Program-made: the position numbers and the translations under genes
Assembly (NCBI GenBank): GCA_002269645.1
Contig: NIVC01000865.1
Coordinates: 1-47,572, forward strand
Length of the DNA: 47,572 nucleotides
From: Macrostomum lignano
Taxonomy: Eukaryota
Direction: 5' to 3'
Notes under the pieces: model-generated
Seen by the model: only the letters and a program-made list of their open reading frames with translations
Database searches by the model: none
What the model was told of the DNA's origin: nothing
Part shown: positions 24,669 to 47,572 of the stretch, one piece after another
How the letters are laid out: every line of letters starts with the position of its first letter
How positions within the stretch are numbered: the first letter of the stretch is position 1

Positions 24669-25590
24669 TTGCTAATTCTGCCTCGCATTCTCCGCCATGC
24701 AAATTACATGATTCACTTTAAATCAGCTCTGATTCTCCCTCACATTCTCCGCCATGCAAATTACATGATTCTCTTTAAATCAGTTCTGATTCTCCCTCAC
24801 ATTCTCCGCTATGCAAATTACATGATTCTCTTTAAATCAGCTCTGATTCTCCCTCACATTCTCCGCCATGCAAATTACATGATTCACTTTAAATCAGCTC
24901 TGATTCTCCCTCACATTCTCCGCCATGCAAATTACATGATTCACTTTAAATCAGCTCTGATTCTCCCTCACATTCTCCGCCATGCAAATTACATGATTCA
25001 CTTTAAATCATCTGATTCTCCCTCACATTCTCCGCCATGCAAATTAAATGATTCACTTTAAATCAGTTCTGATTCTCCCTCACATTCTCCGCCATGCAAA
25101 TTACATGATTCTCTTTAAATCAGCTCTGATTCTCCCTCACATTCTCCGCCATGCAAATTACATGATTCACTTTAAATCAGTTCTGATTCTCCTCACATTC
25201 TCCGCCATGCAAATTACATGATTCACTTTAAATCAGCTCTGATTCTTCCTCACATTCTCCGCCATGCAAATTACATGATTCACTTTAAATCAGCTCTGAT
25301 TCTCCCTCACATTCTCCGCCATGCAAATTACATGATTCACTTTAAATCAGCTCTGATTCTCCCTCACATTCTCCGCCATGCTGATTACATGATTCTCTTT
25401 AAATCAGCTCTGATTCTCCCTCACATTCTCCGCCATGCAAATTACATGATTCACTTTAAATCAGCTCTGATTCTCCCTCACATTCTCCGCCATGCAAATT
25501 ACATGATTCACTTTAAATCAGCTCTGATTCTCCCTCACATTCTCCGCCATGCAAATTACATGATTCACTTTAAATCAGCTCTGATTCTTT
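24669..25590 (+). repeat. 57-bp tandem array, about 16 copies, nearly all containing the octamer ATGCAAAT
   Basis: Unit ctgattctccctcacattctccgccatgcaaattacatgattcactttaaatcagct. Confidence 0.95.
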
Positions 25591-29564: not shown

Positions 29565-30803
29565 TTACTTATAAACGCGCCGAAAAAGCCGTCGAGTTCG
29601 CTCATCCAACTCGCCTTCTTTCAACCACTGATTCCTAAAGGCCTCAACTCCTTGCCATTTCACTAAATACCGCCACTGACCGTCTGAGTCTTTTTCGTAA
29701 GCGTCTACACGCTCGATGACTGACGGCTCCGTACTTTCTTTTGCTACACGCTGTAGTTCTCCCTCATTGAAGTAACCCTCTAGTGTGCTATTTCCGTCTT
29801 CCGGATTCTCTAGTTTATACGACGCTGCTCGGCGAGGATTCGTAGCACGGATCCGAAACACGGTGTTGCTCCACACTGTCGAATAGCCCTTCTCGAAGGC
29901 ACCCCGCTGTCGTGCGATTCTTACCCAGTCCCCTACCTTTAGTGTTGATAGAGGCTGCTGCGAGGCTTCATGCTCTATAATCTCAGACCCGATGATTCCT
30001 TGTAGACGCGGATCCACCGCCGTGTTGTGAGGACTCTGACCAAACAGCGCCCGGTGAGGGCTTGAGTTCAAATTTCGTTCCATTTGGGGTAGAATGTCAT
30101 ACCAGCGTTCTAGGTTTCGAGCCCGAAAATAACGGCTGAGCCGCTCTTTCAGAGTACGGATTAACCTTTCAGCGATCGCAGCCTTGTAATTGCTTTGGCT
30201 AACAAAAAAGCGTACACCCGCCCGTTTTAGTACAGCTTGAGTTTCACGCCCTAGGAACTCCTTTCCCGCGTCACCCTGAAGATAGAGAGGTCGGAAGCCT
30301 TCACGAAACAGATTTTCAAGTGCGGCGCCCACCTCTTTAGCAGTTTTTGTTCGTAGAGGTCGCAGACGTACTTCGCGAGTGAAACAATCGATCAAAACGA
30401 GGATGTAGCGGTATCCCTTGTTTTCTGACTTGTATTGAGGGAGATCAGCCAGGTCGATTTGGAATTGAAAACCAGGGATATGTGGTACACCAATTCTGCG
30501 GGTTTTGAATATTCGTTTAGTTTTGCGAAACAGGTTATATTCTTTGGTATCCCGGGCCCATTCGTCAACGATTTCTGCCGCTCGTTTTGATGCTAGTGAC
30601 GGAAACTGGGTTTTAACATGTCTTAATAGCTGTTGCTTACTTCCCGCAAAAGCAGTAGGGCGGTCCAAATCGTAAAATTGTCTGTCTAAGAAGTTCTTGA
30701 CGTCTAGCGAGTTGTTCTTTCTAGTCCGTTCTTTTGCGTTTTCGGACAGCTGCCGGCTCTGGTGTTTCGCTTTTCGCATCTGAGGTCTCTTTTTCGCTGC
30801 CAT
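29565..30803 (-). CDS. Retroviral-type (rve) integrase with C-terminal chromodomain
   Basis: FQIDLADL..YILVLIDCF (D), LQGDAGKEF (D), AAIAERLIRTLK (E); YLVKWQG..NQW; first ATG at 30803. Confidence 0.92.
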   Translation of the reverse strand: MAAKKRPQMRKAKHQSRQLSENAKERTRKNNSLDVKNFLDRQFYDLDRPTAFAGSKQQLLRHVKTQFPSLASKRAAEIVDEWARDTKEYNLFRKTKRIFKTRRIGVPHIPGFQFQIDLADLPQYKSENKGYRYILVLIDCFTREVRLRPLRTKTAKEVGAALENLFREGFRPLYLQGDAGKEFLGRETQAVLKRAGVRFFVSQSNYKAAIAERLIRTLKERLSRYFRARNLERWYDILPQMERNLNSSPHRALFGQSPHNTAVDPRLQGIIGSEIIEHEASQQPLSTLKVGDWVRIARQRGAFEKGYSTVWSNTVFRIRATNPRRAASYKLENPEDGNSTLEGYFNEGELQRVAKESTEPSVIERVDAYEKDSDGQWRYLVKWQGVEAFRNQWLKEGELDERTRRLFRRVYK

Positions 30804-31020
30804 CGGTTTTTGTATCGGTGATTCCTCCCGCACCGCTGCTCTGTGGCAAGTTATCAGTTGATGCAGAGCGCGTCACCGTCATGCAGCACCTAATGTTCTG
30901 TATGGTGATATCGCCCGCGTCGGGAGTGTCCTCGTTATGGTGGAGTGCCCCGCCTAAGCAGCCTTGCAAAAGTCTCACAACCAAATGAAAAACAAAGCGT
31001 AAAATTTCGCGTAGTTCCAT
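30721..31020 (-). CDS. Small hypothetical Polinton ORF (99 aa) overlapping the integrase start
   Basis: True ATG; fills the gap between ORF235 and integrase; LGG motif; ends in NLS-like RKRKR. Confidence 0.45.
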   Translation of the reverse strand: MELREILRFVFHLVVRLLQGCLGGALHHNEDTPDAGDITIQNIRCCMTVTRSASTDNLPQSSGAGGITDTKTDGSEKETSDAKSETPEPAAVRKRKRTD

Positions 31021-31098: not shown

Positions 31099-31806
31099 TT
31101 AGCTTGTCAATGTCTCGTAATTTTCTAGGAAATCCATTTCTTCGTCCCGTGTTTCTTTGTCCTCGGTAAAGGCGGGTGGTAGCTCTTTCTCTGCTGCAGC
31201 TGACAATTCCGTTCGAAATTGTTTTCCGACAAGCTGAGGATCCGCTTTTCGTTGACGCAGGTAACTTAAAAAGTTTTCCAACCCGCCTGGCAGGCGCCCC
31301 CCATGCCTCTTCAGGGGTTTGTCGCGAACTACGTAGTCCATCAGATCGCGCATCTCCGTTTCGGTTAGTTCGGTGCCGTTTGCCGCCAGATTTGCTTTCT
31401 CATTTTCGATGAAAGTTTTAAGACGTCGCCAACGTGCCTGAAGTGCTTTTGGAATGCGTGTTGTTTCGCTCTCTTCCTCCGCGCTATTGACTAACGGCTC
31501 TTCACTCGCTTGAGGGTTATCATCTGGCTTCAAAAACTTCTCGCGTGTTTGTAGGAGCTTGCTTTCCATTCTGTTTCTTGCCAGACGAGCAGGCGAATTC
31601 GGGGTAGATTGATCCGTAGCAATAATCTCGTCTAACCCATCGATTTTCTGTTTCATCCGCACGAGTTCTTGTCCCATCGTGTCATTTGGCATCTCCAAAA
31701 CCTTTGCTCGTTCGTCAGCGCACTTGTTTTGCGCGACCAGCTGCGAATATTCTGAGATGGGAATAACAACCATCTTTTGCAGTGCCTCGTGTGAGCGAGT
31801 TCCCAT
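31099..31806 (-). CDS. Hypothetical Polinton protein (235 aa)
   Basis: ATG 4 nt after the pX-like stop; QKMVVIPISEY resembles the KM.L.P N-terminus of a common Polinton ORF; predicted coiled-coil composition. Confidence 0.65.
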   Translation of the reverse strand: MGTRSHEALQKMVVIPISEYSQLVAQNKCADERAKVLEMPNDTMGQELVRMKQKIDGLDEIIATDQSTPNSPARLARNRMESKLLQTREKFLKPDDNPQASEEPLVNSAEEESETTRIPKALQARWRRLKTFIENEKANLAANGTELTETEMRDLMDYVVRDKPLKRHGGRLPGGLENFLSYLRQRKADPQLVGKQFRTELSAAAEKELPPAFTEDKETRDEEMDFLENYETLTS

Positions 31807-31810
31807 ATTT

Positions 31811-32263
31811 TCAGTTTCGTTTGTTCTGTATGCTGCGCACGAGACTAGCAGCACCCGCAGCTGTACCTGCAATGCCGGAGGTGATTCCAAGAGCCGTGGT
31901 GATGGATGGTAATGCTGCCGTTACTGCGGCCACAATCGGCGCGAGGAAAGGCAGAAAACCTCCGTGTTGTACAATGATTCTTTTTTTCTCAGTCAGAGAA
32001 TGACCACCCGAAATGAGCTTCTGAATAGGTCGACAATGTTTTTCTAATTTTTTCCGGTCCGCGTGGCGGAGTGGCACTCGCTGCCGCACGATATTGATCA
32101 AGAACTCGACTATACAACGCACTTCTGCTAGACTGAGAGTCTTAAGGAAATCTCGTCTGGTTTTTCTATCACGCAGTCGAGCAACAATGTGCAGAATTTC
32201 CGCGCAGTTTGTGATCGAAGATGCACTCTTTCTCGCTTTTTGCGTTAATCGTCGTGCGGCCAT
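31811..32263 (-). CDS. Polinton basic protein with adenovirus pX-like C-terminus (150 aa)
   Basis: K/R-rich body, then QHGGFLPFLAPIVAAVTAALPSI..GIAGTAAGAASL. Confidence 0.7.
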   Translation of the reverse strand: MAARRLTQKARKSASSITNCAEILHIVARLRDRKTRRDFLKTLSLAEVRCIVEFLINIVRQRVPLRHADRKKLEKHCRPIQKLISGGHSLTEKKRIIVQHGGFLPFLAPIVAAVTAALPSITTALGITSGIAGTAAGAASLVRSIQNKRN

Positions 32264-32314
32264 ATCCTAATCTCCTCACTCTATATTTAATGATGTGCTT
32301 GTTTGCTTATAAAT

Positions 32315-32455
32315 TTAGTCGGTTTTTGGGCGGAAATGCAGCACCACTACGCAATGTGCATCCGGCTGGAAAGTGAGAGGATTTCCCTGTTCGTCACCTA
32401 ACCGAATGGTGATTTCGTCGATATTTTGCCGATTCGTTGGCAAATAGTAGGGATT
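32315..32455 (-). pseudogene. C-terminal fragment of Polinton minor capsid (penton), cut by the fold-back
   Basis: NPYYLPTNRQNIDEITIRLGDEQGNPLTFQPDAHCVVVLHFRPKTD*; mirror copy at 32472-32624 (+). Confidence 0.75.
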
Positions 32456-32675
32456 TTGTGATCATTGGGATTTTGTGATCACAAATCCCTACTATTTGCC
32501 AACGAATCGGCAAAATATCGACGAAATCACCATTCGGTTAGGTGACGAACAGGGAAATCCTCTCACTTTCCAGCCGGATGCACATTGCGTAGTGGTGCTG
32601 CATTTCCGCCCAAAAACCGACTAAATTTATAAGCAAACAAGCACATCATTAAATATAGAGTGAGGAGATTAGGAT

Positions 32676-33116
32676 ATGGCCGCACGACGATTAACGCAAA
32701 AAGCGAGAAAGAGTGCATCTTCGATCACAAACTGGCGGAAATTCTGCACATTGTTGCTCGACTGCGTGATAGAAAAACCAGACGAGATTTCCTTAAGACT
32801 CTCAGTCTAGCAGAAGTGCGTTGTATAGTCGAGTTCTTGATCAATATCGTGCGGCAGCGAGTGCCACTCCGCCACGCGGTACCGGAAAAAATTAGAAAAA
32901 CATTGTCGACCTATTCAGAAGCTCATTTCGGGTGGTCATTCTCTGACTGAGAAAAAAAGAATCATTGTACAACACGGAGGTTGCCTTTCCTCGCGCCGAT
33001 TGTGGCCGCAGTAACGGCAGCATTACCATCCATCACCACGGCTCTAATCACCTTATTGCAGGTACACTGCGGGTGCTGCTAGTCTCGTGCGCAGCATACA
33101 GAACAAACGAAACTGA
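32676..33116 (+). pseudogene. Frameshifted mirror copy of the pX-like ORF
   Basis: Same sequence as the reverse complement of 31811-32263, with several small indels. Confidence 0.8.
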
Positions 33117-33852
33117 AAATATGAACTCGCTCACACGAGGCACTGCAGATGGTTGTTGCAAGGCGAAACTATAGGGCCAGGGAATGTATTGTACAATTAA
33201 ATTATCATATTTCTATATGCAAGTACTTAAACTGATTCAGAGCGAACAACAAGCTACTCTTAGTAGTAGCAGTAGTAGCATTTTGAACGCACATGCAATG
33301 CAAGCGAGCAAAGTACAATGCTCGACTAAACTACTAAAAACGGGGCCAGATAAGGAGTACCCCTTGATCCAGCTAAGCAGGACACGAACCATCAAGACAG
33401 GTCTTGACGTAGAAAAAGTTGTTTTAGGAAGGTCTCCGGGATTCGTTCTCAATGAGAACTGAACAGTTGAATTCCGATCAGAAGAATCTGCGTTTTATGT
33501 CAATTCTGATTGGCTGAGCCGATTTGTTAAAACACACGTAGAACTTTTCGATTGGCTGAAAGCAAGCATGAAAATACAAGGTCATACATGTAATATATTA
33601 TTGAGATAAAAGGGAGAGTGTAATGGGATAATCCGCGAAAAAAGGAATAAAACAAATATATTTTAGAGGAAAAGATTTAAAGCATGTAAAATTGATTTTA
33701 TTCGAAATAAATCTGGTTTCTGTCGTTATTTTTACTGATTGTTGCGTAACTAAGTGCATCTATACTATCGGCAGCGTATTTCATTGAACTGATATTTAAT
33801 CATTATCTTCCACAAACCGTTAAATATATAGTTGTCTTTCAGATTAAAATAC

Positions 33853-34861
33853 CTAACGTTTCTTCCTCCTCTTGAAACGGCGAATCTCCAATTCACACAA
33901 AGCGTCAATAGAAGGATCATTGAATAGACCAGGAGCAGCAGCAGGCAGCTCAGGCTCATCGATCAGTTCAGCCGGTTCTTCGCTCTCCTGCCGGTCGTGA
34001 CTGCATCGACACACGTCCGAAATGACGTAACTCACACAGTTGGTTAGGGAGCCCCCGTGGCACCCTTCCCTACAGGGCCTGCAGACTACTTGATTCGAAC
34101 TGCTGTGGTAAAGTTCCTGCACAAACCGAGCGTCCTTGCACGCAAAAAAGTCAGCAGTACATTTGGCGTATTTCTGAACAGTTGCACTGAGCCCGTTATT
34201 GTCAACCATGATCTCCAGCAGGTCCATCAGAGGATCGAACAGGCCGTACGAACTGCGATTCGAAAATATGTTTTTAAGTGTCCAGAAGGATAACATTAGG
34301 AAAATTTATTTTAATTTTGACTCACCCATTCGTTAAGCTAATTTTGCAGCACTTCTTTGCAAGGGCCGACGAAGATGAGCTCCAGAAGAAAGCACCGAGA
34401 GGGAGTCTTGGAATCTGTAGTACAGCAAGGCGAGCTTGGTAGCTCTTCTTTTCTCCTTTTCCATTGATAACCTCGCGAACAAAATGTTCGCAGTTATTCT
34501 TCATTAGATTGTAGTTGGTCTCTCCGACTCGTTTTAGGCAGTCCAGCACTACTCGAGCTCGCTTCTCGGCGCTACACTTGCAGTGGAAAACTCGAATGGG
34601 AGAAAGTCCGACAACGTCGCGGAAGTCATCGATTCGAACGGAAACTCTTGCATTCGAAGCAACTTCGCCCGAGAAGTGACACAGGAGAGGCACCGGGTCC
34701 GATTGCCCGCCTCTGGGGAAGGCCCAACCTAGGAAGATGGCGAAGTGGCCAAGAGCGACTCGATTAAAGCTGATGGCGGAGCCTGGGACCATGGCTTTCA
34801 GAGCGTCATCGGCCCGCGATGCTGAAAAATCGTCGTAGCCATTAGTAAAACCGACACACAT
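33853..34861 (-). CDS. LRAT/PLAAT-family (H-box/NCEHF) protein fused to a degenerate UBR-box-like Zn finger, 2 exons, 311 aa (copy A)
   Basis: Exon 1 34861-34326 (HFAIFLG, LCHFS, NNCEHF); 73-bp intron gtgagt..cgcag; exon 2 34252-33853 in frame (SYGLFDP..KCTADF..VVCRPCREGCH..CRC). Confidence 0.8.
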
Positions 34862-34970
34862 TTTTCTAAACTTTTGTGTGAAATACACTTGATGGCGTGA
34901 AAACAAACAGCCTTACTACACTAATACAATAGAGATATAATAGAGAGAAATATGGAACCAAAGACTTGAA

Positions 34971-34990
34971 GGTATTTCCATGGAATTTCC
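34971..34990 (-). promoter_or_regulatory. Tandem Rel/kB-like motif GGAAATTCC-AT-GGAAATACC
   Basis: 110 bp upstream of the copy A ATG, in the divergent A/B intergenic region; near-identical motifs upstream of copies C and E. Confidence 0.6.
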
Positions 34991-35390
34991 TTTAGTTCTA
35001 TCTTCTACATCTTTCAAAAACATCAGACTCGCCTTTCACCACCGTACAATGGTATAGAAAGGTATTTTACTTTTAAAGCCACAGGTAGCATAAAAGCGTA
35101 CTCGCTGTACAAAAGGACGCAAACAAATTCGCAAGTGCGTCCAAGGTCTTTCACGCGTCACTTTAGTTCTGTACAATCTGCGTATGACCAACTCAGCATG
35201 TAGGTTGTTGCGCTTCAGTCGAATTTCAGTCGAAAAAGCAAGTAGATTGCAGATTGGCTTGCACAAACAATGAACTTGGCGTAGTGCTCTAGAAAAAAAA
35301 CTGCAGCAGAGCGTACTAGATAGTTTATCAGCCAACAAACTGTCTCGGCTGTCCAAAAAGGATCTTGTTTACCACATTTCACCTCAAGTC

Positions 35391-36376
35391 ATGTGCGTCG
35401 GCTTTACAAACGGCTACTCGGACTTTGCTTCGGACAGAGTCGAAGAAGCGATCGTTGCCGCCGTGCCCGGGTCCGCCGTCAGCTTCAACAGAATCGGCTT
35501 CTTTCACTTCGCCGTTTTCCTGGGCTGGGCCTGGCCCAAGGGCGACGACTCGGAGCCCATCCCGCTGCTGTGCCACCTCTCCGGAGACGCCAGCACGAAG
35601 CCGGTGGCGTCTGTTCGACTTGACGACTTCAGAGACATCGTCCAGAGCTGCACCATCCGGGTGTACAACTGCAAATGCAGCGCGAGCAAGAGATCTCAGG
35701 TGATCCTCAATTGCCTCTATCTAGTTGGCAAGGCTGGCTACAATCCGCTGACCAACAACTGCGAGCACTTTGTGAGAGAAGTGATTTGCGGTCAGAGCAC
35801 CAGCTATCAGGCCGTTTGGACTCTTGCAGCTCCGTTAATTCAGCTGCCGCGAATTCTTCTGGGTAGCGCTGTAGTCGGGGCCGCCACTTCGTCTGCTTCA
35901 TCGAACTGCGCATCCAAATTTGAGGAGAATCGGTAAATGTTGAGAAATTCTTTACTTTTTCTGCATCCTGATGCATGGTTATTCACTGCCTGCTTTCCCA
36001 TTTCAGATCACTGGGACTTCTTAATCCGGAAAGAGATCTAATAGAGATTATATTGTCAAAGCATGGTTTACATTTACAAGGCGTCAAGTTGAATTCTGTC
36101 TGCACAAGGGAATTCGGAGGCTTAAGCACGTTTCCAATGCAGTTTCTCTACACCTGCAGAAGCTGCAGCGGCAGTGAAAAGATGGCGGTGTGCCGGCCAT
36201 GCCAGAAGCTTTGCCATGCAAAATGTATTTTTCGAACTGGAATTGTGTCTGAGAATGTGTGCCGGTGCTCTCACGCCATGAAATCCGAGGCAGTGCAACT
36301 GCCTCTGCAACTGGATCTTCAAGAAGAATCTACTTCATCAGTCGAATGTGACGGCTCTCTCTCATCTTCTTGTTAG
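35391..36376 (+). CDS. LRAT/PLAAT-family protein fused to a UBR-box-like Zn finger, 2 exons, 303 aa (copy B)
   Basis: Exon 1 35391-35932 (HFAVFLG, LCHLS, NNCEHF); 74-bp intron gtaaat..tttcag; exon 2 36007-36376 in frame (CTREF..FPMQFLYTCRSC..AVCRPCQKLCH..CRCS). Confidence 0.82.
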
Positions 36377-36456
36377 CCCTTATTTTACAAAAAACACATT
36401 GTTTTACACAACTTTATGCATTGGACTACACTCTGTTTATCAGTGAGAAAGATTCT

Positions 36457-36578
36457 GGGCCCGTTCTATGAAGCCATCGTAAGATAAGATCGTTCTTAGC
36501 TCCTACATGTATCTCCGCAGTGAAAAAGTTCCGACTTACGATCGAACCTACGCTACGACAGCTTTATAGTACGACCCC
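36457..36578. mobile_element. Short MITE-like element with imperfect ~26-bp terminal inverted repeats
   Basis: gggcccgttctatgaagccatcgtaag vs revcomp of right end ggggtcgtactataaagctgtcgtag. Confidence 0.45.
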
Positions 36579-37337
36579 ATTATTCTTAAGCTATGAATCT
36601 TTTTAACTGATATTTTAGTAATAATCCCAGGCTTCATAATGCTTTCAGTTTACTGTACAGCTTTTATTATTGTTAAAGACAATTAAGACGTTTTCGATGG
36701 TTTTGAAGCAAATCTTTTTAACTAACCACTTACACGTGCTTTTTACGGCACTTTCTGAGTGTATGCGACAGAATAAACTAAAGAGCCACCAGTCTACTAA
36801 GACGTTTATAAAATTGAGTAGCGGTCCAAATTTACTGCTAGTAGCTCGTAGTAGCTATTGTAAAATAATGCAAATAGACCAATTTAATTCCAACAGTATA
36901 CTAGTGGTTTGTTTCCGTGTTGTGTACGCAGCTAGTCAAAAAGGAAATACAAAAAGCTTACTAAACTATTGTTTGCAATAGTATAGAGAGACAGTATACC
37001 CACTGTCTATGAAAGTTCTGAAATATGCATGCCAGGTGATTAAAGCAACTAATATGACTGAGCAACTCGCTGTCCATGCACTCGTCATTGCGAGCTAGAG
37101 GATTTCTAAAATGGGCACGGAAGTACGGAATGAAAGGAAAGATAAGTAGAAGCCTTTACAACTGTGGCAGTCGGGCTTGAAAGTACGAAATGCAAAAAAA
37201 CATTTACATTCTGCATTTAATGTACGTTATTGGTTCCGACAGTCTGTGTGCTAATACTAGCTGTGGTAAGCTTGGGAATAAGGAACTTCATTTTTCGATT
37301 TTCTTTCAAGCTGAACTGTAAATATCTATGACTATAA

Positions 37338-37375
37338 AGTCCATGGAAAATCCTCAGAAATTCCATGGAAAATCC
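37338..37375 (+). promoter_or_regulatory. Orphan duplicated Rel-like motif (agtccatggaaaatcc + agaaattccatggaaaatcc)
   Basis: Matches the motif upstream of the LRAT copies, but no adjacent ORF recognised. Confidence 0.35.
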
Positions 37376-38483
37376 GTGATAAACCTTAGAATCATATAGC
37401 TCGTTGTCCTTGAAACTTTATTTCCAGAAAAGTGCATTCTTTTTCATGACCTCGAGCGTATTTCTCGCGAACTACGCTTGCTAATTACTTGTTCAAATCA
37501 GTTTTACACGCTTGCATCTCATCTATATGTTTATGCAGATAGCTGAAACATCGTTAGTCGTTATAACCTTTCCTGCCTACCCATTCCTGGCAATCCCTCA
37601 CTGTGGATCCCGTGCACACCAGAGGCTTCTGTGGAGTCCCAACACACCTGCTGCACAATACAATCTACTGCCATCCTGTGTAAAAGGGTTTCACTGTACA
37701 TGTAGATGGCACAACTGGTACATCTATTGAAGTTACAAAATATTGTGCCAATTATTAAAACACTGATAGCAACTCATTCAAGAAGATGAGTAAAACAAGC
37801 TAATAACCAAAGAGAGGTCCAACCGATTGAGCAGATGTCCAAACTCCAGGCTTTTAAGAATCATCACCTGTAATGCACCAAGGGATACAGGAGGAATCGT
37901 TTACGCATACTGCACTAAAATGTCACAGGAAGGAAGGAGGCCGAAAAACAGCACATCCGTGAATGTTTGACATCTGATGATTCAAATATGTATGAAACGT
38001 AGACCTTAAGAGAGTACACAAATCGATGCTGTGGGAGCTTGAGCTTGCTGGTGCTGCAATAGCGCCTATGGAAACTGCTTCGGGTAAAAATACCAGGAGC
38101 CTATCACGAGATTTGCCTGCTAAGCAAAATAAATTTTATTCCTGGCGTTAAGCTATTAAAATATAATGCGCGTCCAAGCGTTGCCCAGGTGCTAAAATTT
38201 TTATTCTGTTCTCAAAGTAGGAGAAGCAGGTATTATATTATATTTTAATTTTTCAAGTTTTCCATAATGAAATAAAATGTGCCAGTTGGCTTTGCTCAGC
38301 TTTCCTTTTGTCCATGCAGCGCACCTCATCTCATAACAAGCACGAGTACTCGATGGGTACTTGAGTACATATGTGTATATTACTATTAACTATGCTCAAA
38401 TGTTATTTATCTCAGGCTTAGAGTTTAAAAAGGGGAAGTTCGCACAAAAAAGTTTGGGTTTTTGTATACTGGGACTTTGTGTC

Positions 38484-38514
38484 GGAAATTCCGTGGAACT
38501 ACCGCGGAAAATTC
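38484..38514 (+). promoter_or_regulatory. Tandem Rel/kB-like motif GGAAATTCC-GT-GGAACTACC plus a third half-site
   Basis: 130 bp upstream of the copy C ATG; tatataa at about 38567. Confidence 0.6.
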
Positions 38515-38632
38515 ATGCAAAAGACACTAAAACTTGAATAAAAATTACTTGATTTCAGCATGCAGCTATATAACACAGCTTTCCATATTGCGAAAACGGA
38601 ACTCCTGCAAGCAAACAGAGCTAACAGCAGAC

Positions 38633-39675
38633 ATGTGCGTTGGCTGGACTAACGGCTACAGAGACTTCGAATCTGTCGAATCTGCTTTGAAAGCCATGAC
38701 TCCAGGCTCGGCCATCAGCTTCAACAGAATTGGCTTGTATCACTTTGCGATCTACTTGGGCCTAGCTTTTCCCAGGGGCGGGAATTCGGGGCCGATTCCT
38801 CTGATCTGCCACCTGTCAGGTGGTGCCAGCACGCAGCCAAAAGCATCCGTTAGACTGGATGACTTCAGAGCCGTTGTGCAGAATTCTACTATTAGAGTGT
38901 ACTGCTGCAGTTGCAGTGAGAGCAAAAGGGCACGAGTGATCTGGGAGTGCCTCTGGAGAGTTGGCGAGGAAGGGTACGACCTGTTCTTTAAAAACTGTGA
39001 GAGCTTTGCGCGCTATGTGATCAACGGGGTATCCGTCAGCTATCAATCTCTTTGGACTGCGGTGGTACCATTTATTCAGATTCCCCGGTTTATTATCGGA
39101 GGAATCTCCGGAGGATCATCCTCTTCGTTGGCCTCATCAAGCTGCGCATCGTACTGCTTAAACAATTTGTAAGCTTGTGTGACGCATGTTGGTAATGGAT
39201 AAATAATCAGCGGTCCCAGTGCGTGACAACGATTGTCTGGCGAGCGCCGGTAGGCGCGAGCCATAGACAAATTGTTGTCACGTGATGCGACCGCTGATTC
39301 TTTGCATTGTTTTTCTGTTTGACGATCCTACAGACAATGCATTGTTTGTAGCAATGGATTGTTCTGCACTAAAAATGTAAATAATGATCGTCAAATTGCT
39401 AAACAATGAGCATTTTATGCTAAAAAGCTGAGCATTTTACTACGTCGTATAAGAGAATATTGACTACTTCTTTCTGTACTTTAATTTATTTCGCAATTTA
39501 AAGAAACAACCGAAAATCTTTCAGAGACTACGGACTGATGGACCCCGAGGGTGATATGCTCTTGATTTCGGTCTCGAGTGGCGGCCTGCAGGCATCTGTA
39601 AAAGCTTTCCCCTCTTCGTATTTTTTTCGACTCGCTGAATTTGCTACATTTCTTATGGAGAGTTTTTCAGACTGA
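38633..39675 (+). CDS. LRAT/PLAAT-family protein (copy C), 2 exons, no Zn finger found
   Basis: Exon 1 38633-39168 (HFAIYLG, ICHLS, KNCESF); phase-2 intron gtaagc..tttcag (356 bp); exon 2 from 39525, DYGLMDPEGDMLLISV..GL, homologous to exon 2 of A and B; stop at 39673-39675. Confidence 0.75.
39205..39299. other. Intronic inverted-repeat hairpin (~34-bp imperfect stem)
   Basis: aatcagcggtcccagtgcgtgacaacgattgtct pairs with agacaaattgttgtcacgtgatgcgaccgctgatt. Confidence 0.65.
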
Positions 39676-41362
39676 AGTTAAACGATCATCCATCAATACG
39701 TTGTAACTTCTCATCTATTTACCTTTCGTTACTCTAGCAATTTGATTGTAGCTCATTTTGGTGTGTAGCCAAGGCTTGAAGTTTTCCAGTTGAGTTGAAA
39801 AGTAAAGTGCTAGGTGCGCACAGTTGCTTTATTTATATTTTTGCTATTTAAGAAAAACTGCATGATCGATATTTTAACTACACTAGAAAAACTGCACGAT
39901 TGATAAATAAAAGAGCTAGAGATATCACGTGATTAATAATACATTACACAGATAATTTATCAACTACTCTACTTAAAGTGGCAGTATAAGAAATAGACAA
40001 TAATAATAATAATAATATAGTTAGCATATACGTTATAGTAGAAATATTAGCGTAAAATATTATCTATCATTAAGTTGGTCTGTCAGGTTACACGACACAA
40101 CACATTTTGCACTGTTATTAAAATCAATCGTATGTTTTGTACTCAACACATCTTTTAATTATACGCAAAAAATTATTTATTGACCTTAGGATTGCTAAAA
40201 ATGCTTTGTCTTTGTACCCTATGATCCCATTCTTTGATATCCAGCCAAAGAGCAAAAGAGCAAAAGAGAGTAAAATCAATACCAGGAAAATCCGAAAAAA
40301 ATTAGGAAGCAACTTGCAAAAGTCCAATATGTATTTTTCACTTTTCGTTAACTAACTATTCTAACAGGATTATAATTTCAGTTAAATAGGCCGAAGTGTG
40401 AAAAGTGTATAAAAATGACTTTCACATATCTGCTTTTGACGGTTGCTTTAAAGATAAAAATTTTTTCCCTATTTTGTACTCTGTTTTTCCTGAATGTATT
40501 TTTTCTATAATTCTTCGAGTTCTAAAACTGTTAGACAGATAGTTTTTTTTTTAATCGCGCGATGGTCTCAAATCTGATAATTTTTGTATGTACACAAATT
40601 CATATCTCAACAATCCAGTTTCTAATCTAGATTACTGACTTGGAAAGTCCCTGATAGTAGTGAAGTTGCTTGTAATACTCGTAAAAGGCTTTTTAGATCT
40701 TTTATATGGAATTAAAAACTATTTTAACACGATTTAATTATTGTAAAAGCGTGCATTAAACGCAAAAGCGTGCTTAAACGGCTCGTAATCGTGTATTGGC
40801 TAGAGTCATTTAATCTACGAGAAATATAGCTCGTATATATATAGTGACAAGCTGTTGAAACCCGCGGATTTTGAACCCGGGGAAACTCCAATCCCCGGAA
40901 CTATTTTTGCATGTATTCTAAAATCTGAGGTCAAACTCAAACAAAAACTTGTTAATAGTTACGAAAGAGTTAAACATAAAATAGAGTACACATTTGTGTA
41001 AAATTAGGATTTGAGGCAAACATTGATATTGTTGGCTAGGGTGCTGCGCAGAATGTCAGGCAAACTCTGGCAGTCTGGCTGGCCTCTGCCTCTGCATCTG
41101 CCTCTCTGTCTCCCTATGCCCCTTGGATCCTTTGAAATTTCTATCTTCTCTTCTGTTTCATCTCTTCTCTCTCGTCTCTTGTCTCTTCCTTCTCTTCTCT
41201 TCTCACTCTTTACTCTACCCTTTCAACATTTCCTTCATCTACTCCTTTCTCATCCCTTTCTCATCTCTTCTCTCAACTCTCTCCTCTCCTCTCTCCACTC
41301 TCTCCTCTCATCTCTTTCCTCACCTCTTTTCTCTCTTATCTCTTCCCATTACTCTCTGCTTG

Positions 41363-41540
<178 letters not shown>

Positions 41541-41651
41541 GAAGTAATTTGTACACAGACACACAGAGTTTTCTTTTTTATAGGTAGAGATTACAATACT
41601 ATTCAATACTAAAGACCAAACCCTAGCTCGAATTTAATTAAGTCTATGGGG

Positions 41652-43067
41652 CAGGGTCGTCAAACCTTTTTAGCTCAAGGGCCAGATAGAGAATTCCTAG
41701 CGCATGACTTGCGAGCCAGATGAGGGGCGAGAGAGGAGAGGGAATAGAGAAAAAGAGCAGTATACACTCAGCAACATAGAAAAGTTTCCACCCTAGCGCG
41801 CGAAGGGTCAACGTTTTGGTGGGTGGAGATATTCGTGGTTTGAACCATAGACAAATATATAATCCGGATTCGAACGAAGCAAAGGAACAGCAAAGAAACA
41901 AAGTACGCGAGCATGGGTGACAACTTGCCCAGAACAGGGTCAGTAACGCATATAGCAGCCACTTGCGTGCAGCAGAGCGCTCACTCTCCGGGGCATCCCC
42001 AGAACCAGAAATCTTGCGGTAGTTGTTGCCATGCAGTAGACAGTGATTCGCGCAGTTGGGCAACGTTTTGCGGCGGATTGTCGCGCCGAATCGAGCGCTT
42101 CAGGTAATCCCAAACGTGCTCTATGGGATTCATGTCCGGTGATCGGGACGGCCAGCGCAAGGATCGCAGGTGCAGCAGCTCCTTCAGATGCGCCACAGCG
42201 GCTGCGCGATGCGGTGGGGCGTTGTCGTCTTGGAGGACGCTGTTCTCCACGCCACCACATGAAGTATCAATGAAGAGCAGCAGGCGCGTCTATAGAAAGT
42301 TGGCGTACGACTCGGCAGTCACAGTCGCATCCAGGAACACGAGCTCCGTCTTCGCGTGCATTGTGATGCCTGCCCACACGTGAATAGAAGCTGACTGGCT
42401 CTCAGAGTTTTGCACGTGCTGCGGCAGCATCTCCTGGCGCGGCTGGCGCCACATGCGAATGCGGCTGTCGGCACGGAACAATCGAAAGCGGCTCATATCT
42501 GTGAAAATCACTCGCCGCCACTGCTGCTACCTCCAGTTGACCCTTTGCATTGCCCATTGTTCCCGGCTGGCCACATGGGTTGGGGTCAGGCGTGGCCGTT
42601 TGCGCATCTTACGGGATCGCAGCATGGGTCTGCTCCATGTGACTGTTATTTCCTTCGACCTGTCTGACGTCTATGGCCCAAGTTTTTGTCTATGGCCCAA
42701 GTTTGTGTTGACGAAATCATCAATCGTCTATGGCACAAGTCTGGCGACAAAAACCTGTTTTGAAACTCTAAATATACACGGCTGGCGCGAGGGTGGAAAC
42801 TTTTCAATGTTGCTGAGTGTAGCTATGAGATAGGAGAAGAGAGGAAATAAAAGAGAAGAGGGAAGAGAGAGGACAGAGGAGAGAAAGAAGAGGAGAGAAG
42901 GGAGAGAAGAGGAGGAGAGGAGATCCGACTTGGTAGCTGAGATAAATTGAGACACCAACCTTCAGCCATTGTGGATTGCTATTGTGAAGTTTAAAAGTTC
43001 CCGAGGGCCGGATAGAGAGGCTTCATGAACCGCATATAACCTTCGGGCTAGAGTTTGCCAACCTCAG
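41652..43067. mobile_element. Possible hAT-like non-autonomous element enclosing the Tc1 fragment
   Basis: Left cagggtcgtcaaacc..gggccagata; right gggccggata..gtttgccaacctcag (imperfect inverted ends). Confidence 0.35.
41981..42670 (-). mobile_element. Tc1/mariner DD34E transposase remnant, disrupted
   Basis: VIFTDMSRF (D), HVWAGIT, LQDDNAPPH (D), WPSRSPDMNPIEHVW (E). Confidence 0.92.
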
Positions 43068-43581
43068 CTACAGAGTACATGGTCTCGCTTCATTCGCTCA
43101 GTATTGTTGAATAGCTACAAAAAGGACTGCTCCGAGAAGGAAAAATTACGAGCTAAGCGCATTGAAGCTTTGTCGCCTGCTCCATATAGATGCAGTTATA
43201 TTCCAATGTCAGCCCTTTTTTCTGGAAAAGAAAATACCCCAGCTTGAATGTACATGAGGGCTTATAATTCGTACTCTCGCGATATCTCTGCTGCGCTCAT
43301 TGCAGTGTGCACTCGCCATTCTAAAGTACCGCATTATGGGCGCATAGTCTGCTTCTGTCTGACTCTTTCTCTATTCGCGTACTTTGGTTATTTTATTTTT
43401 TAACAACCAAATCGAGCTGTCTGCAGTGGCGCCGCCACCCATAGAAGCCGATTTTCAAAGCCGAAAAGAATTTAACAGTTTCTGAGTTTTGTTTCCATTT
43501 GGCAAATTGATTTGAAAATTAAATTCCTTAAAAAGCTCTGATTATCTAACAACACGTTAAGACTACTATCTTGCAAAAACA

Positions 43582-45357
43582 ATGTCCCGCAAGCACTGCC
43601 AGAGCTGTGGCTTCAAGTTCGATGAATCCTGGACAGCCCACTGCTCCAGGTGCGACACGACTTTCGACTTCAACGGGGACGTCAGCAATGCCCTGTGCAA
43701 GTCGTGCGGCCAGGAGGCCTTCATAATGCAGGACGAAGTGATGGAAATTTGCAAGTTCTGTCTCAGAGCTCTAGAGGCAAGTAAATTTCAAAGATAATTT
43801 ATGCTCAAAGCCATTTTAATGTGTCTGCTTAGCACTTAACCGTCAACTTGAATGCCCTGCAGACTGGAGAAGAAGGCAGAAAAAATGAAGCCACTGGAAC
43901 TTCCTGTGCGTCAGACAAACCGGAATCTGGACAGAAGAATGACGAATTCACATCCGATGTAAGTTGCAATGAGGTACAGATTTTATTTGGGTTTTAAAAC
44001 TGAGCGTTTACAGAAGCTTTAACAAATTACACTCTGCATGCGCTAATTCACTCTGTTATCACGAACTCTTACTTCAGAACGACCAAGACGAACTCTGGCG
44101 ATGCGTGGGCTGCGTATGCGGCAACCAAGACCCTCACAGTTTCAAACTAAGCACATGCAAATGGCCAACCAAATCTTATTACTGTCTGGACTGCAGAGAG
44201 CCTTACAGCGCTTTCATTTGGGACACCGAACTACGCTGGGACCAGTGCCCCAGGTGCAATGGTGACAAAGTTCAGGTTGACAAAATTGCAACGGGAGGTA
44301 CCATGATTGAATGCCAAAATTGTTCTAGTAAAATCTCAAAGCAGAGATTCGATTTGCTACATCAGGAGGTGAAAGATAAGTGCGAGAATGAAGAGAGAAT
44401 GAAAGATGGCAGAAACAGCTAAATGAGACTTTCGAGTGCCAACACTGCGGTTCTGCTCAGGTTCAATTTGTACTCAGCGAGACCGAAGGCAAGCGTGCGT
44501 GCTGCAAGCAGTGCGGCACTTGCAACAAAACAAAACTTCTTTAGCTTGGGACAAAGAAAATGACCAATTCGAAACTGCTGCAGACGACGAGAAAGACAAA
44601 CAGAGCGACAAGAAAATAGCTGCGATTCCAGAGAAATATAAAAAGCTGTCAAAGTGCTGCGGAAACTTCGCCAGCCTCCATCCGGTAGAAGGGGATCCCG
44701 ACGATGACCTGCTCGTGTGCGATCAGTGCGATCAAACTATCAGTCTAAGAAGCTTCGATGATCGCCGAATCCCGCAAACAGTCTCGGCCCTCCGACGTGC
44801 GGTCAAGGGCCGGTTCTCCAGAGGCAAAATGGGGCGCCCGTATGCCTGTGTCAAGGTTAGCGACATAGACGAGCTGAAGCCGGCCGACCAGCTTGACTTT
44901 CGGAGGTCTTTGTACTCGCACACGCTATAGTGGAAAAGACACTCCCCGACTCCAAGGAAGTTCAGGTTATCGAATATACTGGCGAGTCAAACAGGCCAAC
45001 TATTCAGGCTTTTTGAATCAGCTGCCAACAAAGGCTTGCATAGCAGAGAGCACTTTAAAGCTTCAAGACATTGTAAAATGCATGCACAGAGTTGACTATC
45101 ACAGTCTAGACTGCTTCCACCCGAAAACTGTGCTGGAACGGGCGAAGAAGCGAGTCGGAGAGAAACAGTACCACGTCGTGGGAAGCAACTGCGAGCACTT
45201 CAGCAACTGGGCCAAAGCCAATGTAGCATTCTCCCGTCAGGTAAAGAAGAAGCAGAAATGGGCTCTGAAGAAGCTCGGCCGCTGTGTGACTAGGATTACG
45301 GACATCGGGGATAGGCTTCCGAAGGACGGATCGAGCAGGGCCGCCATGGGGTGCTGA
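43582..45357 (+). CDS. Multi-Zn-ribbon protein with C-terminal LRAT domain (copy D); at least 3 exons, at least 4 apparent frameshifts, 3' end uncertain
   Basis: Exons 43582-43776 (GC-AG intron), 43863-43958, 44078 onward; many CxxC pairs; ELKPADQLDFRRSLYSH(H)AIVEK..VIEY; ERAKKRVGEKQYHVVGSNCEHF at 45187. Confidence 0.6.
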
Positions 45358-46697
45358 TAGAGATTCGAAAAGAGATGCTTATGGCGATCGATCGAAAAGG
45401 CTCAGCTTCGGTGCAAGACTTCTGGTGCCCCATCCGGCTGCTGATCGAGTGGTCCATACGCCGTATCCCGCTGACCTTTGTGCCCATCATGTCAGCGAAG
45501 GCTGGCTGCAAGCTGTTCTGGAAGCAGACGGCTTACTGAAACTCGTTGGCAGGACCGTCGCCAAAGTGCCGCAAAAAGATTCTCGCAATCAAAGATACCG
45601 AAGATGATCTAGACAAGAAGGAAATCGAAAGAGAAAAAAAATGAACTAAAATATTGTGGGGCCTCCGCGATATAGACTAAAATATTTTCGCTCGTGTGCT
45701 GCGGCAGGACTCACTCCTCTGGCCGTTTCTGTCTGCTGTTATCTCTGCCTCCTCTCGGCTGTTTTTTTTCCTTTATCTGTTGGTAATCCTTTTTAATTCG
45801 AGTTCGTCTGATATTTTGTTCTGATCAATGACTTTATTTGTTCTATTCCTTTTGCTGTAAAAGATTGAATTGAGCCCTTGATTCCTTCTGTTGTTTCCTC
45901 ATTGGCCCTGCTCTGGTTTCCATCTATGCTCAGCTATTTCATGGTCCCTCCGTTTGAATAGTTTTGTTTTACTTAAGTTTCTCGGCTAAACGTAGCTCGT
46001 ACACTAAACAAGATTCAGATAATTAACGGCTAGTAACTTTCAAAAGTAACCGAATAGCAGTAGCATCGTTTGCGTGTTGGCGTTGTCATTATCGTTGTTT
46101 TAGAGCTACTTAATATGTTTCTAAGAAAATAAGTTGTACTTTGTATAAAAACAAAGAAACCATTGTCAATGCTACGCTCGTATTGATTATTGTTTGCAAG
46201 TTTTAACTTTTGCGGTTTGTAATCGTTACTTGTGATTGTTTTTTACAAATTTACACATAAAATAATTGGAAACTGTTCGTTAAAAAACAGTGTATAAAAA
46301 TAAAGCAAGTTCTTATTGCAGTCGTGAGTCCTTGCGGTCTAGGCTACTGGTTTATTTATGATCTGTCTTAGTGGACTAACACTGGTTTTAATTGGTTTTA
46401 ATACAAACAAGCATGTAATAGGTTGCTAATATTAACCCCATAGGTGCAGAATCTAGGAGTCCATGTCTGAATAAAAACAGCCCCTGACTAACGAACTTGA
46501 TAGATCCAGCCTGCGAGGCACACATAAATTGTTTTCTTCATTTGGAGCCAGACTCTAGAAATATATTATGGTCTAGATGTAGCTTATACGTTAAATAACT
46601 GTAAATTTATCGCGGCCCAAGACTGCCAAAACGATTGGCCTACAAATGAAAAACTCAACAGAGACTGAACTAAAGCCTCTATTGTACTCACACCGAC

Positions 46698-46717
46698 GGT
46701 ATTTCCACGGAATTGCC
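46698..46717 (-). promoter_or_regulatory. Tandem Rel/kB-like motif (revcomp GGCAATTCC-GT-GGAAATACC)
   Basis: 146 bp upstream of the copy E ATG; TATAAAA at about 46753. Confidence 0.55.
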
Positions 46718-46862
46718 TTTAAGAAGAACACTGGCCAAGAGAACCTGTGTGTATAAAACGATCCAGTAGAGATGCTCACAGTGCTTGTGTAAAAAAGGAA
46801 CTTCCAAGCAGTCTCTGCAAAGCTCATTTATCGGAAGGGCCATTCCATCCTTTGTAGCAGAA

Positions 46863-47153
46863 ATGTGCGTCGGATTCACCAACGGCTATCAGGACTTCCC
46901 GGCTAGCGACACCGACCCCGCCTTGGCCACCATGGTCCCCGGCTCCTGCGTCAGCTTTGACCGAATATCGCTGTTTCATTTTGCCATCTTCCTGGGCTGG
47001 GGCTGGCCGGAAGGCAGCGCCGAGTCCCGGCCACATGGTCTGCCACTTCTCAGTCGGGTCCACGTCTGGGTCTGAAGCGGCTTCCGTTCGATTGGACGAC
47101 TTGCGGGAGGTTGTGCAGGTGAATATGCTATCTATCCATCTATCTATCTATCC

Positions 47154-47207
<54 letters not shown>

Positions 47208-47232
47208 TATCTAATCTATCTATCTATCTATC

Positions 47233-47274
<42 letters not shown>

Positions 47275-47572
47275 GAATTTTAAGGGCTCCACAGTCCGCG
47301 TGTATCGCTGCACCTGCAGCACAACGACTCGAGCTCGGGTCGTGTCGGACTGCTGCAGCGGGTCGGTGAGTCCGGCTACAGCGCCCTCACTAACAACTGC
47401 GAGCACTTCGTTCGCGGATCATCACAGGCGAGAATGTCAGCTACCAGGCCTTCTGGACGGTGGCGATGCCAGTTGTGCAGCTGCCCCCGTCTGCTAATGG
47501 GAGGCCGCTAAACGGAACCGCATCATCGATTTCTTCCGTCAGCAGTCGATGCGGATCGGGAAATCTGTCTGG
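46863..47572 (+). CDS. LRAT/PLAAT-family protein (copy E) with an extra intron and several frameshifts; runs off window end
   Basis: MCVGFTNGY..HFAIFLG..VCHFS..VRLDDLREVVQ | intron 47119-47284 | GSTVRVYRCTCS..NNCEHFVR. Confidence 0.7.
47129..47274 (+). repeat. (TCTA)n microsatellite filling the intron of LRAT copy E
   Basis: Near-pure TCTA run between gtgaat and ttttaag. Confidence 0.95.

What the first reader, a model, noticed from the sequence alone, without database searches (positions are those of the whole stretch)
34971..46717. Conserved 20-bp tandem kB/Rel-like element upstream of the LRAT paralogues
GGAAATTCCATGGAAATACC (A, 110 bp upstream), GGAAATTCCGTGGAACTACC (C, 130 bp) and GGCAATTCCGTGGAAATACC (E, 146 bp, inverted) are conserved while the flanks show no evident similarity. 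Each is two 9-bp GGAAATWCC-type sites around a TTCCRYGGAA palindrome, which resembles Rel-homology (NF-kB/NFAT) dimer sites and a STAT-like TTC-N4-GAA. Position and orientation independence argue for a selected cis-element. Inference: an immune- or stress-inducible effector regulon; vertebrate PLAAT3/4 have known links to viral infection and interferon responses.
Basis: partly seen in the sequence, partly recalled or inferred. Interest (0 to 1): 0.7.

Follow-up and report, generated by a model that had tools for sequence, protein, structure and literature searches.

The report
Conserved promoter motif in flatworm LRAT genes
A 20-bp sequence sits just upstream of several duplicated LRAT-family enzyme genes in the flatworm Macrostomum lignano and has stayed almost unchanged while everything around it diverged, so it is most likely a shared transcription-factor docking site, but which factor binds it and what signal it answers to are still unknown.

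Summary
The window is Macrostomum lignano contig NIVC01000865.1. No other site in the 47.5 kb resembles the motif. It is the only significantly shared block in the three promoters, although coding four-fold sites are near saturation (35-50% identical). This indicates constraint. Each gene-linked copy lies 29-64 bp upstream of a TATA-like box, in either orientation.

The invariant core is AATTCC-NN-GGAA. C and X carry extra units at an 11-bp period. The best known match is the NFATC1 homodimer SELEX consensus TTTTCCATGGAAAA, so a Rel-homology (NFAT-type) dimer is the leading candidate. That is resemblance only. Published surveys report no canonical NF-kB or STAT in flatworms. A planarian does have divergent Rel-homology factors and a conserved NFAT5.

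The "immune-inducible regulon" idea is untested. The only contextual hint is that the family's next relatives are LRAT-caspase fusions. A genome-wide scan for a dispersed repeat was not possible with these tools. Verdict: a real, probably functional cis-element of an ordinary kind, of moderate interest.

The parts
34971..34990 (-). Motif copy A: GGAAATTCCATGGAAATACC. It lies 110 bp upstream of the ATG of LRAT gene A, in the 529-bp head-to-head spacer shared with gene B, 401 bp from B's ATG.
   Evidence: 34.7 bits. Identical in the 98% copy L002.
37334..37375 (+). It is an array of four 11-bp-period units. The best 20-mer is AGAAATTCCATGGAAAATCC at 37356-37375, and there is a second palindrome GTCCATGGAA at 37339. 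No LRAT coding sequence follows, so it is a promoter relic or a distal element 1.26 kb upstream of C.
   Evidence: 30.0, 19.3 and 12.9 bits. tblastn finds no LRAT remnant nearby. Identical in L002.
38484..38514 (+). Motif copy C: GGAAATTCCGTGGAACTACC plus a third unit, GGAAAATTC, at the same 11-bp period. The 20-mer ends 130 bp upstream of the ATG of C.
   Evidence: 33.6 and 10.8 bits. Identical in L002.
46698..46717 (-). Motif copy E: GGCAATTCCGTGGAAATACC, inverted relative to gene E and 146 bp upstream of its ATG.
   Evidence: 33.6 bits. In L002 the only change inside the motif is in the central spacer (TTCCGCGGAA), while the surrounding 270 bp differ at about 5% of positions.
34935..34942 (-). 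TATA-like box TATTATAT of gene A, 29 bp downstream of the motif and 74 bp upstream of the ATG.
   Evidence: Read from the sequence; the transcription start site was not measured.
38567..38573 (+). TATA box TATATAA of gene C, 64 bp downstream of the 20-mer. An alternative, ATAAAAA, lies at 38538-38544.
46752..46758 (+). TATA box TATAAAA of gene E, 35 bp downstream of the motif. It is conserved in L002.
33853..34861 (-). LRAT gene A. Exon 1 is 34326-34861 (LRAT domain). A 73-nt intron follows. Exon 2 is 33853-34252 (Cys-rich tail).
   Evidence: (311-aa product). Splice sites were read.
35391..36376 (+). LRAT gene B (BOX15_Mlig006329g2, 303 aa). Exon 1 is 35391-35932. Exon 2 is 36007-36376, with a weak UBR-box-like zinc finger. 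It has no motif of its own within 400 bp.
38633..39675 (+). LRAT gene C. Exon 1 is 38633-39168. The putative exon 2 is 39525-39675: the linker is retained but no zinc finger was found. It is not annotated in the public record.
46863..47572 (+). LRAT gene E. Exon 1 is 46863-47118. The intron, 47119-47284, is filled with (CTAT)n. Exon 2 runs from 47285 to the end of the window. It has a frameshift in the window copy but reads in one frame in L002.

Best explanation
The 20-mer is a promoter-proximal binding module for a dimeric sequence-specific transcription factor. Selection has kept it upstream of the tandemly duplicated LRAT genes A, C and E of Macrostomum lignano, and probably B, which shares the divergent spacer with A. 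Of these genes, only B shows the weak UBR-like finger.

The module sits about one to two nucleosome-free turns (29-64 bp) upstream of a TATA-like box and works in either orientation. Its functional core is the dyad AATTCC-NN-GGAA. The two central bases are free and the outer GGAA-like units are weaker. Unit duplication at an 11-bp period, which puts units on the same helical face, has produced three units in C and four in X.

The factor most compatible with the sequence is a Rel-homology protein of the NFAT type (NFAT5-like or one of the divergent flatworm RHD proteins) bound as a dimer. This would give the paralogues a common, probably signal-dependent, transcriptional input.

Shown here: the motif's presence, its exclusivity within the window, conservation above neutral expectation, its position relative to the ATGs and TATA-like boxes, and its orientation independence. 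Inferred: that a protein binds it. Only a lead: the factor's identity and the inducing signal.
For: - Chance is excluded. Shuffles gave 0.00 expected matches against 4 found. It is the only significant shared block in the three promoters, with 4 mismatches against a null of at least 10. PWM hits occur nowhere else in the window and none in the ~6.9 kb of extra sequence in L002 (the rest of that stretch is an assembly gap).
- Constraint is indicated. Paralogue coding sequences are 61-66% identical at the nucleotide level, and four-fold degenerate sites are only 35-50% identical against 26% for random sequence. Neutral promoter DNA should therefore be unalignable, and the flanks are. The motif keeps 18 of 20 positions.
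- The substitution pattern fits a dyad site. Positions 4-9 and 12-15 are invariant in all copies. The central dinucleotide varies (AT, GT, and GC in L002).
- The promoter context is consistent. TATA-like boxes lie 29, 35 and 64 bp downstream, with the ATGs 66-111 bp beyond them. The motif has the same orientation as the gene in A and C and is inverted in E.
- There is a candidate factor. PMC11577440 cites the Taipale NFATC1 dimer model TTTTCCATGGAAAA. The sites match 12/14 (X), 11/14 (A), 10/14 (E) and 9/14 (C). A planarian has seven RHD factors, including a well conserved NFAT5 (PMC13563047).
Against: - There are no expression, TSS or binding data.
- Only four or five site sequences exist, all from one gene cluster. 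The two genome copies are 98% identical and so nearly uninformative.
- Copy X has no gene behind it. At least one copy therefore persists without an obvious target.
- B has no proximal copy.
- The left half of the core reads GGAAT rather than the NFAT-preferred GGAAA, and C's right half reads GGAAC.
- Whether M. lignano itself encodes an NFAT/RHD protein was not checked.
- Whether the motif is dispersed across the genome could not be examined.
Confidence: 0.6

Rival explanations
1. The motif is a fragment of a dispersed repeat or mobile element (for example a MITE end or an 11-bp minisatellite seed) that landed or expanded near these genes. It would not be a selected regulatory site.
For: Copy X stands alone without a gene. 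X and C show tandem 11-bp unit expansion. The locus is rich in mobile DNA: a gypsy element, a Tc1/mariner insertion polymorphism and a hairpin MITE in C's intron. No genome-wide scan was possible.
Against: Only 20-27 bp are shared, with no terminal inverted repeats, no target-site duplication and no longer common flank. All four copies lie in the 12-kb LRAT cluster, and none lies in the remaining ~35 kb of the window or the ~6.9 kb of readable extra L002 sequence. Three of four copies sit at a similar distance from an ATG and a TATA-like box.
Confidence: 0.12
2. The motif is a neutral leftover of the promoter that was duplicated together with the genes, or a short gene-conversion patch. It would have no present function.
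For: The genes are paralogues, so their promoters were once identical. A and E share 24 of 27 bp, slightly more than the 20-mer.
Against: Four-fold sites are near saturation and nothing else in 300 bp aligns. Retention of 18 of 20 positions in three lineages by drift is very unlikely. Roughly 2e-4 per pair even at 50% per-site identity is my own binomial estimate, not a tool result. The inverted orientation in E is not what simple tandem duplication gives. Conversion tracts are usually longer than 27 bp (general knowledge).
Confidence: 0.08
3. It is a STAT-type GAS element with 4-bp spacing (TTC-N4-GAA) bound by a STAT dimer. The pairs of palindromes at 11 or 22 bp would be bound by tetramers.
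For: All copies keep TTCC-NN-GGAA, the everted geometry typical of GAS sites. X has two palindromes 22 bp apart.
Against: A 2026 survey did not detect STAT in Platyhelminthes (PMC13203501). That survey is internally inconsistent about JAK, so this is weak evidence. Conservation extends to AA on the left of the core and A on the right, which fits GGAAA-type recognition better than a GAS site.
Confidence: 0.07
4. It is an X-box bound by an RFX factor, as in ciliary gene promoters. C. elegans xbx-6 has GTTTCCATGGAAAC at -151.
For: The central 10 bp are identical to some C. elegans X-boxes, and the distance from the ATG is similar.
Against: The defining outer GT...AC of GTHNYY-AT-RRNAAC is absent. 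The sites read AATTCC...GGAAAT, GGAAAA or GGAACT. LRAT enzymes are not known ciliary genes (general knowledge).
Confidence: 0.04
5. It is two tandem canonical NF-kB sites, each bound by a Rel/NF-kB dimer, driving an infection-inducible regulon.
For: GGAAATTCC in A and C is a classical 9-bp Rel-homodimer-type sequence (general knowledge). The next relatives of the gene family are LRAT-caspase fusions, which hints at cell-death or defence biology.
Against: The outer half-sites are the least conserved positions: GGCA in E, AGAA in X, and TACC or ATCC on the right. Only 2 bp separate the two 9-mers, which is tight for two encircling dimers (structural knowledge, not tested). No NF-kB family member was found in Platyhelminthes in one survey, and planarian RHD proteins are highly divergent. 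There are no induction data.
Confidence: 0.08

Closest known systems
NFAT homodimer site (HT-SELEX NFATC1 model TTTTCCATGGAAAA) / NFAT5-TonE class of Rel-homology sites
   Same: The central palindrome TTCCATGGAA is identical in A and X. There is a GGAAA core on at least one half in A, E and X. It has dyad symmetry. It lies in a promoter-proximal position. An NFAT5 homologue is well conserved in at least one flatworm.
   Different: The left half reads GGAAT rather than GGAAA. C and E have G at the centre, and C has GGAAC. The flanks are AA rather than TT on the left. No protein has been shown to bind. Whether M. lignano has an NFAT gene was not checked.
NF-kB (kB) sites, e.g. 9-bp GGAAATTCC Rel-homodimer sites in tandem
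   Same: The left 9-mer in A and C is a textbook kB-like sequence, and there are two units in tandem.
   Different: The outer half-sites are degenerate. The spacer between units is only 2 bp. Canonical NF-kB is reported absent from flatworms.
STAT6-type GAS element TTC-N4-GAA
   Same: The everted TTCC-NN-GGAA geometry is present in all copies. Paired palindromes lie about one or two helical turns apart.
   Different: STAT was not detected in flatworms in a published survey. Conservation extends beyond the GAS core.
RFX X-box (GTHNYY AT RRNAAC)
   Same: It shares the central CCATGG and the distance from the ATG.
   Different: The outer GT/AC positions that define the X-box are missing.

Membership tests
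Selected promoter-proximal transcription-factor binding site | Conserved above the neutral expectation among homologous promoters | tested here: met
   The motif keeps 18 of 20 positions in three paralogues. Four-fold sites are 35-50% identical and the flanks are unalignable.
Selected promoter-proximal transcription-factor binding site | Located upstream of a core promoter or transcription start site | tested here: inconclusive
   TATA-like boxes lie 29-64 bp downstream and the ATGs 107-146 bp downstream. No TSS data were available.
Selected promoter-proximal transcription-factor binding site | Bound by a protein, and mutation changes expression | not testable with these tools
   This needs EMSA or DAP-seq and a reporter transgene.
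NFAT-type Rel-homology dimer site | Matches the dimer consensus TTTTCCATGGAAAA or a GGAAA core | tested here: inconclusive
   Matches are 12/14 (X), 11/14 (A, X0), 10/14 (E) and 9/14 (C). The consensus was taken from the model name quoted in PMC11577440. One half-site is consistently GGAAT.
NFAT-type Rel-homology dimer site | A cognate RHD/NFAT protein is encoded by the organism | not tested
Only planarian data are available: seven RHD factors and a conserved NFAT5.
NF-kB (kB) site | GGGRNWYYCC-like 9-10-mer with both half-sites conserved | tested here: not met
   The inner halves are invariant, but the outer halves vary: GGAA, GGCA or AGAA on the left and TACC or ATCC on the right.
NF-kB (kB) site | An NF-kB/Rel protein is present in the lineage | not testable with these tools
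   Literature only. No NF-kB family proteins were found in Platyhelminthes, and the planarian RHD proteins are divergent.
STAT GAS element | TTC-N2-4-GAA palindrome | tested here: met
   TTCC-NN-GGAA is present in all copies.
STAT GAS element | A STAT protein is present in the lineage | not testable with these tools
   Literature only. [quoted passage not shown]
RFX X-box | GTHNYY AT RRNAAC with conserved outer GT and AC | tested here: not met
   The sites read AATTCC..GGAAAT, GGAAAA or GGAACT.
Heat-shock element | Alternating nGAAn units with 2-bp spacing (GAAnnTTC) | tested here: not met
   The spacings are 1 bp (GAA-A-TTC) and 4 bp (TTC-CATG-GAA), read.
Dispersed repeat / transposable-element fragment | Many copies sharing longer flanks, terminal inverted repeats or target-site duplications | tested here: inconclusive
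   Not met within the window or the 98% copy L002. The rest of the roughly 760-Mb genome (size from memory) could not be scanned.

The most novel reading that the evidence does not exclude
The motif is the response element of a Rel-homology (NFAT5-like) stress or defence pathway in a flatworm. It would drive a lineage-specific family of LRAT/NlpC-P60 enzymes whose next relatives are fused to caspase domains. This would be the first cis-regulatory code for an inducible effector regulon in a phylum that lacks canonical NF-kB. M. lignano is transgenic-competent, so it would be directly testable there.
Probability: 0.12. Interest if true: 0.6.

Novelty: new member of a known kind. Interest (0 to 1): 0.35.

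Why it matters
Cis-regulatory logic in flatworms is almost uncharted, and the transcription factors behind planarian and macrostomid stress and defence responses are unknown (PMC13563047). A short, well-delimited element shared by a co-located gene family gives a concrete handle. It can be mutated in M. lignano reporter transgenes, used as bait for the binding protein, and used as a genome-wide search pattern to define a regulon.

If the binder is an NFAT5-like protein, this would link a conserved Rel-homology factor to a lineage-specific enzyme family related to LRAT-caspase fusions. If it is not, the finding remains an ordinary conserved promoter site in one small gene cluster.

Tried and rejected
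- Chance: rejected.
- Known RNA family or tRNA overlapping the motif: none in the window.
- Heat-shock element and RFX X-box: the spacing or the outer positions do not fit.
- A hidden LRAT pseudogene behind copy X: tblastn finds none. The weak A-X similarity downstream of the motif adds only about 6 score units over 105 bp, so I do not count it.
- Fetching more paralogous promoters failed. P0002 and P0003 are not on record as contigs. The window ORF for B and the MACPF ORF have no exact record. The third homologue search, with the D ORF, returned nothing.
- The second genome copy, L002, is 98% identical and gives almost no footprinting power.
- Literature searches for M. lignano NF-kB, NFAT or the gene identifier found nothing specific. 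The eLife planarian infection paper does not mention NF-kB.
- The hit in the Xenopus Mix.2 activin response element (TATTCCATGGAAATG) is incidental to its FoxH1 sites. Most other literature hits are NcoI primers.


Full report
**Origin of the window.** A protein search with LRAT paralogue B returned a 100% match to BOX15_Mlig006329g2 of the free-living flatworm Macrostomum lignano. The encoding contigs are NIVC01000865.1 (110.4 kb) and NIVC01003758.1. BLAST shows that the window is the first 47,572 bases of NIVC01000865.1. The second contig (locus L002) is a 98% identical copy of window 33655-47572. It lacks a Tc1/mariner insertion at 40948-42572. This is therefore a eukaryotic locus with spliced genes, microsatellites and retroelements, not a virus or a bacterium.

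**Check of the observation.** All three 20-mers are present at the stated coordinates and strands. Shuffled sequence gave no matches.
- The ATGs are at 34861 (A, minus strand), 38633 (C) and 46863 (E).
- This reproduces the stated distances of 110, 130 and 146 bp, and the inverted orientation at E.
- One search also revealed a fourth copy, X, at 37356-37375 with three mismatches. It is preceded by a further partial copy.
- The exact core TTCCRTGGAA occurs four times in the window, only at these sites.
- A weight matrix built from the sites scores above 10 bits only at the four sites and at positions shifted by 11 bp from them: 37334, 37345 and 38495.
- X therefore carries four units at an 11-bp period, C carries three, and A and E carry two.

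**Is it more than residual paralogy?**
- The coding regions of A, B and C are 59-63% identical in protein and 61-66% in DNA.
- Their four-fold degenerate sites are only 35-50% identical, against 26% expected for unrelated sequence. Neutral divergence is close to saturation.
- Local alignments of 600 bp upstream regions find nothing in common except the motif. Between A and E the shared block is 27 bp with 24 identities.
- An exhaustive k-mer comparison of the 300 bp upstream of A, C and E puts every top-scoring word inside the motif. For 20-mers the best word has 4 summed mismatches. The best of 40 shuffled sets has 10 and the mean is 12.8.
- Constraint on this block is the simplest explanation.
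- L002 adds little because it is so similar. Three sites are identical. The E site carries one change, in the central spacer (TTCCGCGGAA), in a promoter that differs at about 5% of positions.

**Anatomy of the element.** Across A, C, E, the L002 copy of E, and X:
- Invariant positions are AATTCC (4-9) and GGAA (12-15).
- The central dinucleotide is AT, GT or GC.
- The outer left half is GGAA, GGCA or AGAA.
- The outer right half is TACC or ATCC.

The best-conserved part is therefore the everted dyad AATTCC-NN-GGAA, not the two kB-like 9-mers as wholes.

**Promoter context.**
- Each gene-linked copy is followed, in the direction of the gene, by a TATA-like box. These are TATTATAT 29 bp away in A, TATAAAA 35 bp away in E, and TATATAA 64 bp away in C, where ATAAAAA at 35 bp is an alternative.
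- The ATGs lie 66-111 bp beyond those boxes.
- The motif has the same orientation as the gene in A and C and the opposite orientation in E.
- In the A/B head-to-head pair there is a single copy in the 529-bp spacer. B has no copy of its own.
- X has no LRAT coding remnant near it. It is either a relic promoter or a distal element 1.26 kb upstream of C.
- No Rfam family or tRNA overlaps any copy.

**The genes.**
- A, B, C and E encode LRAT/NlpC-P60 domains that pass Pfam's cutoff for PF04970.
- His39 and the Cys61-His62 pair are invariant, and the NCEHF motif is widely kept.
- A and B have a phase-2 intron, followed by a Cys-rich exon. In B that exon weakly resembles a UBR box, below the Pfam threshold.
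- The family is narrow. Only five proteins, all from M. lignano, were found among 5.8 billion. An exhaustive profile search found two clusters below 1e-30 and then a sharp drop.
- The next M. lignano relatives are proteins that fuse this LRAT domain to a caspase domain. This is a mild contextual hint of cell-death or defence biology, and no more than that.

**Which factor?** These are resemblances, not tests.
- *NFAT-type Rel-homology dimer.* The core TTCCATGGAA is the centre of the Taipale-laboratory NFATC1 homodimer model, quoted as TTTTCCATGGAAAA in PMC11577440. The sites match it at 9-12 of 14 positions. NFAT-type proteins recognise GGAAA. The right half fits in A, E and X, while the left half reads GGAAT.
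- *Canonical NF-kB.* PMC11432056 found no NF-kB family members in Platyhelminthes.
- *Other RHD proteins.* PMC13563047 reports seven highly divergent RHD factors and a well conserved NFAT5 in Schmidtea mediterranea.
- *STAT.* PMC13203501 did not detect STAT in Platyhelminthes, although that paper is not fully self-consistent. A STAT-type reading (TTC-N4-GAA) fits the geometry but has no known binder in the phylum.
- *RFX.* An RFX X-box shares the central bases but not the defining outer GT/AC.
- *HSF.* A heat-shock element does not fit the spacing.

I could not check the M. lignano factor repertoire directly.

**Verdict.** A selected, orientation-independent promoter element is well supported by sequence statistics. 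A Rel-homology (NFAT-type) binder is the best lead, but it is unproven. Tandem canonical kB sites and STAT are less likely. The "immune- or stress-inducible regulon" idea is untested.

The main unresolved risk is that the motif belongs to a dispersed repeat. Only about 56 kb of this genome could be read, so that alternative cannot be excluded by counting. The short shared length, the absence of repeat hallmarks and the consistent promoter position argue against it. This is a new instance of a familiar kind of feature, of moderate interest, and readily testable in an organism with working transgenesis.

Noticed in passing
proteins P0009, P0010 (M. lignano; not in the window): The closest M. lignano relatives outside the small family are proteins that join this LRAT domain to a caspase (Peptidase_C14) domain. 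One of them also starts directly with Met-Cys.
   Followed up: partly
window 34859-34861, 35391-35393, 38633-38635, 46863-46865 (start codons); B exon 2 36007-36376: All family members begin Met-Cys-Val (invariant M1 C2 V3). B also carries a weak UBR-box-like zinc finger. An N-terminal Cys and an N-degron-reader-like domain in one protein is an odd combination. The finger scores below Pfam's cutoff.
   Followed up: partly
window 40948-42572: A Tc1/mariner-type insertion (transposase remnant DDNAPPHRA...WPSRSPDMNPIEHVW) flanked by a long (TC)n tract. It is absent from the 98% identical copy L002, so it is an insertion polymorphism between the two copies.
   Followed up: partly
window 31765-33157: This 1.4-kb stretch matches its own reverse complement at 96%. 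It lies next to a Ty3/gypsy chromodomain-integrase ORF (29565-30833, minus strand). It could be a real palindrome or a long-read assembly artefact.
   Followed up: no
window 24675-25588 and 15631-16850: Two satellite-like arrays: 57 bp x 16 copies (96% matches) and 37 bp x 33 copies (93% matches). The second is covered by several overlapping ORFs.
   Followed up: no
window 19837-24039 (+): A single 1400-aa open reading frame that combines a MACPF/perforin domain, seven ephrin-receptor-like Cys-rich repeats and an NCD3G domain. It has no copy of the motif upstream.
   Followed up: partly
window 43582-45357 (+); L002 16470-18537: Gene D (zinc-ribbon repeats plus a distant LRAT domain) is annotated as one 620-aa product in L002. 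In the window it is split into a 211-aa product and two further ORFs in other frames. It lacks the motif.
   Followed up: partly
window 46863-47118 (E) and L002 13238-13695 (C): E has a frameshift in the window but reads in one frame in L002. C is intact in the window but is split between two frames in L002. This is either copy-specific decay or long-read indel errors.
   Followed up: partly
window 34862-34866, 35387-35390, 38629-38632, 46859-46862: An AG lies 2-4 nt upstream of the ATG in all four paralogues (TTTAG-AAAA-ATG, CAAG-TC-ATG, GCAG-AC-ATG, GCAG-AA-ATG). This could be a spliced-leader or 5'-UTR intron acceptor.
   Followed up: no
window ~39195-39300: A hairpin-forming element of about 100 bp, MITE-like (ATCAGCGGTC...GTGACAACGATTGTCT / AGACAAATTGTTGTCAC...GACCGCTGAT), lies inside the intron of gene C.
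   Followed up: no
proteins P0014 and P0008 (contig sizes both given as 45,456 bp, ENA, so possibly one contig); P0007 (Logan contig, 7.2 kb): These are more divergent homologues of the family. P0014 starts MCVGFTNGY.
   Followed up: no
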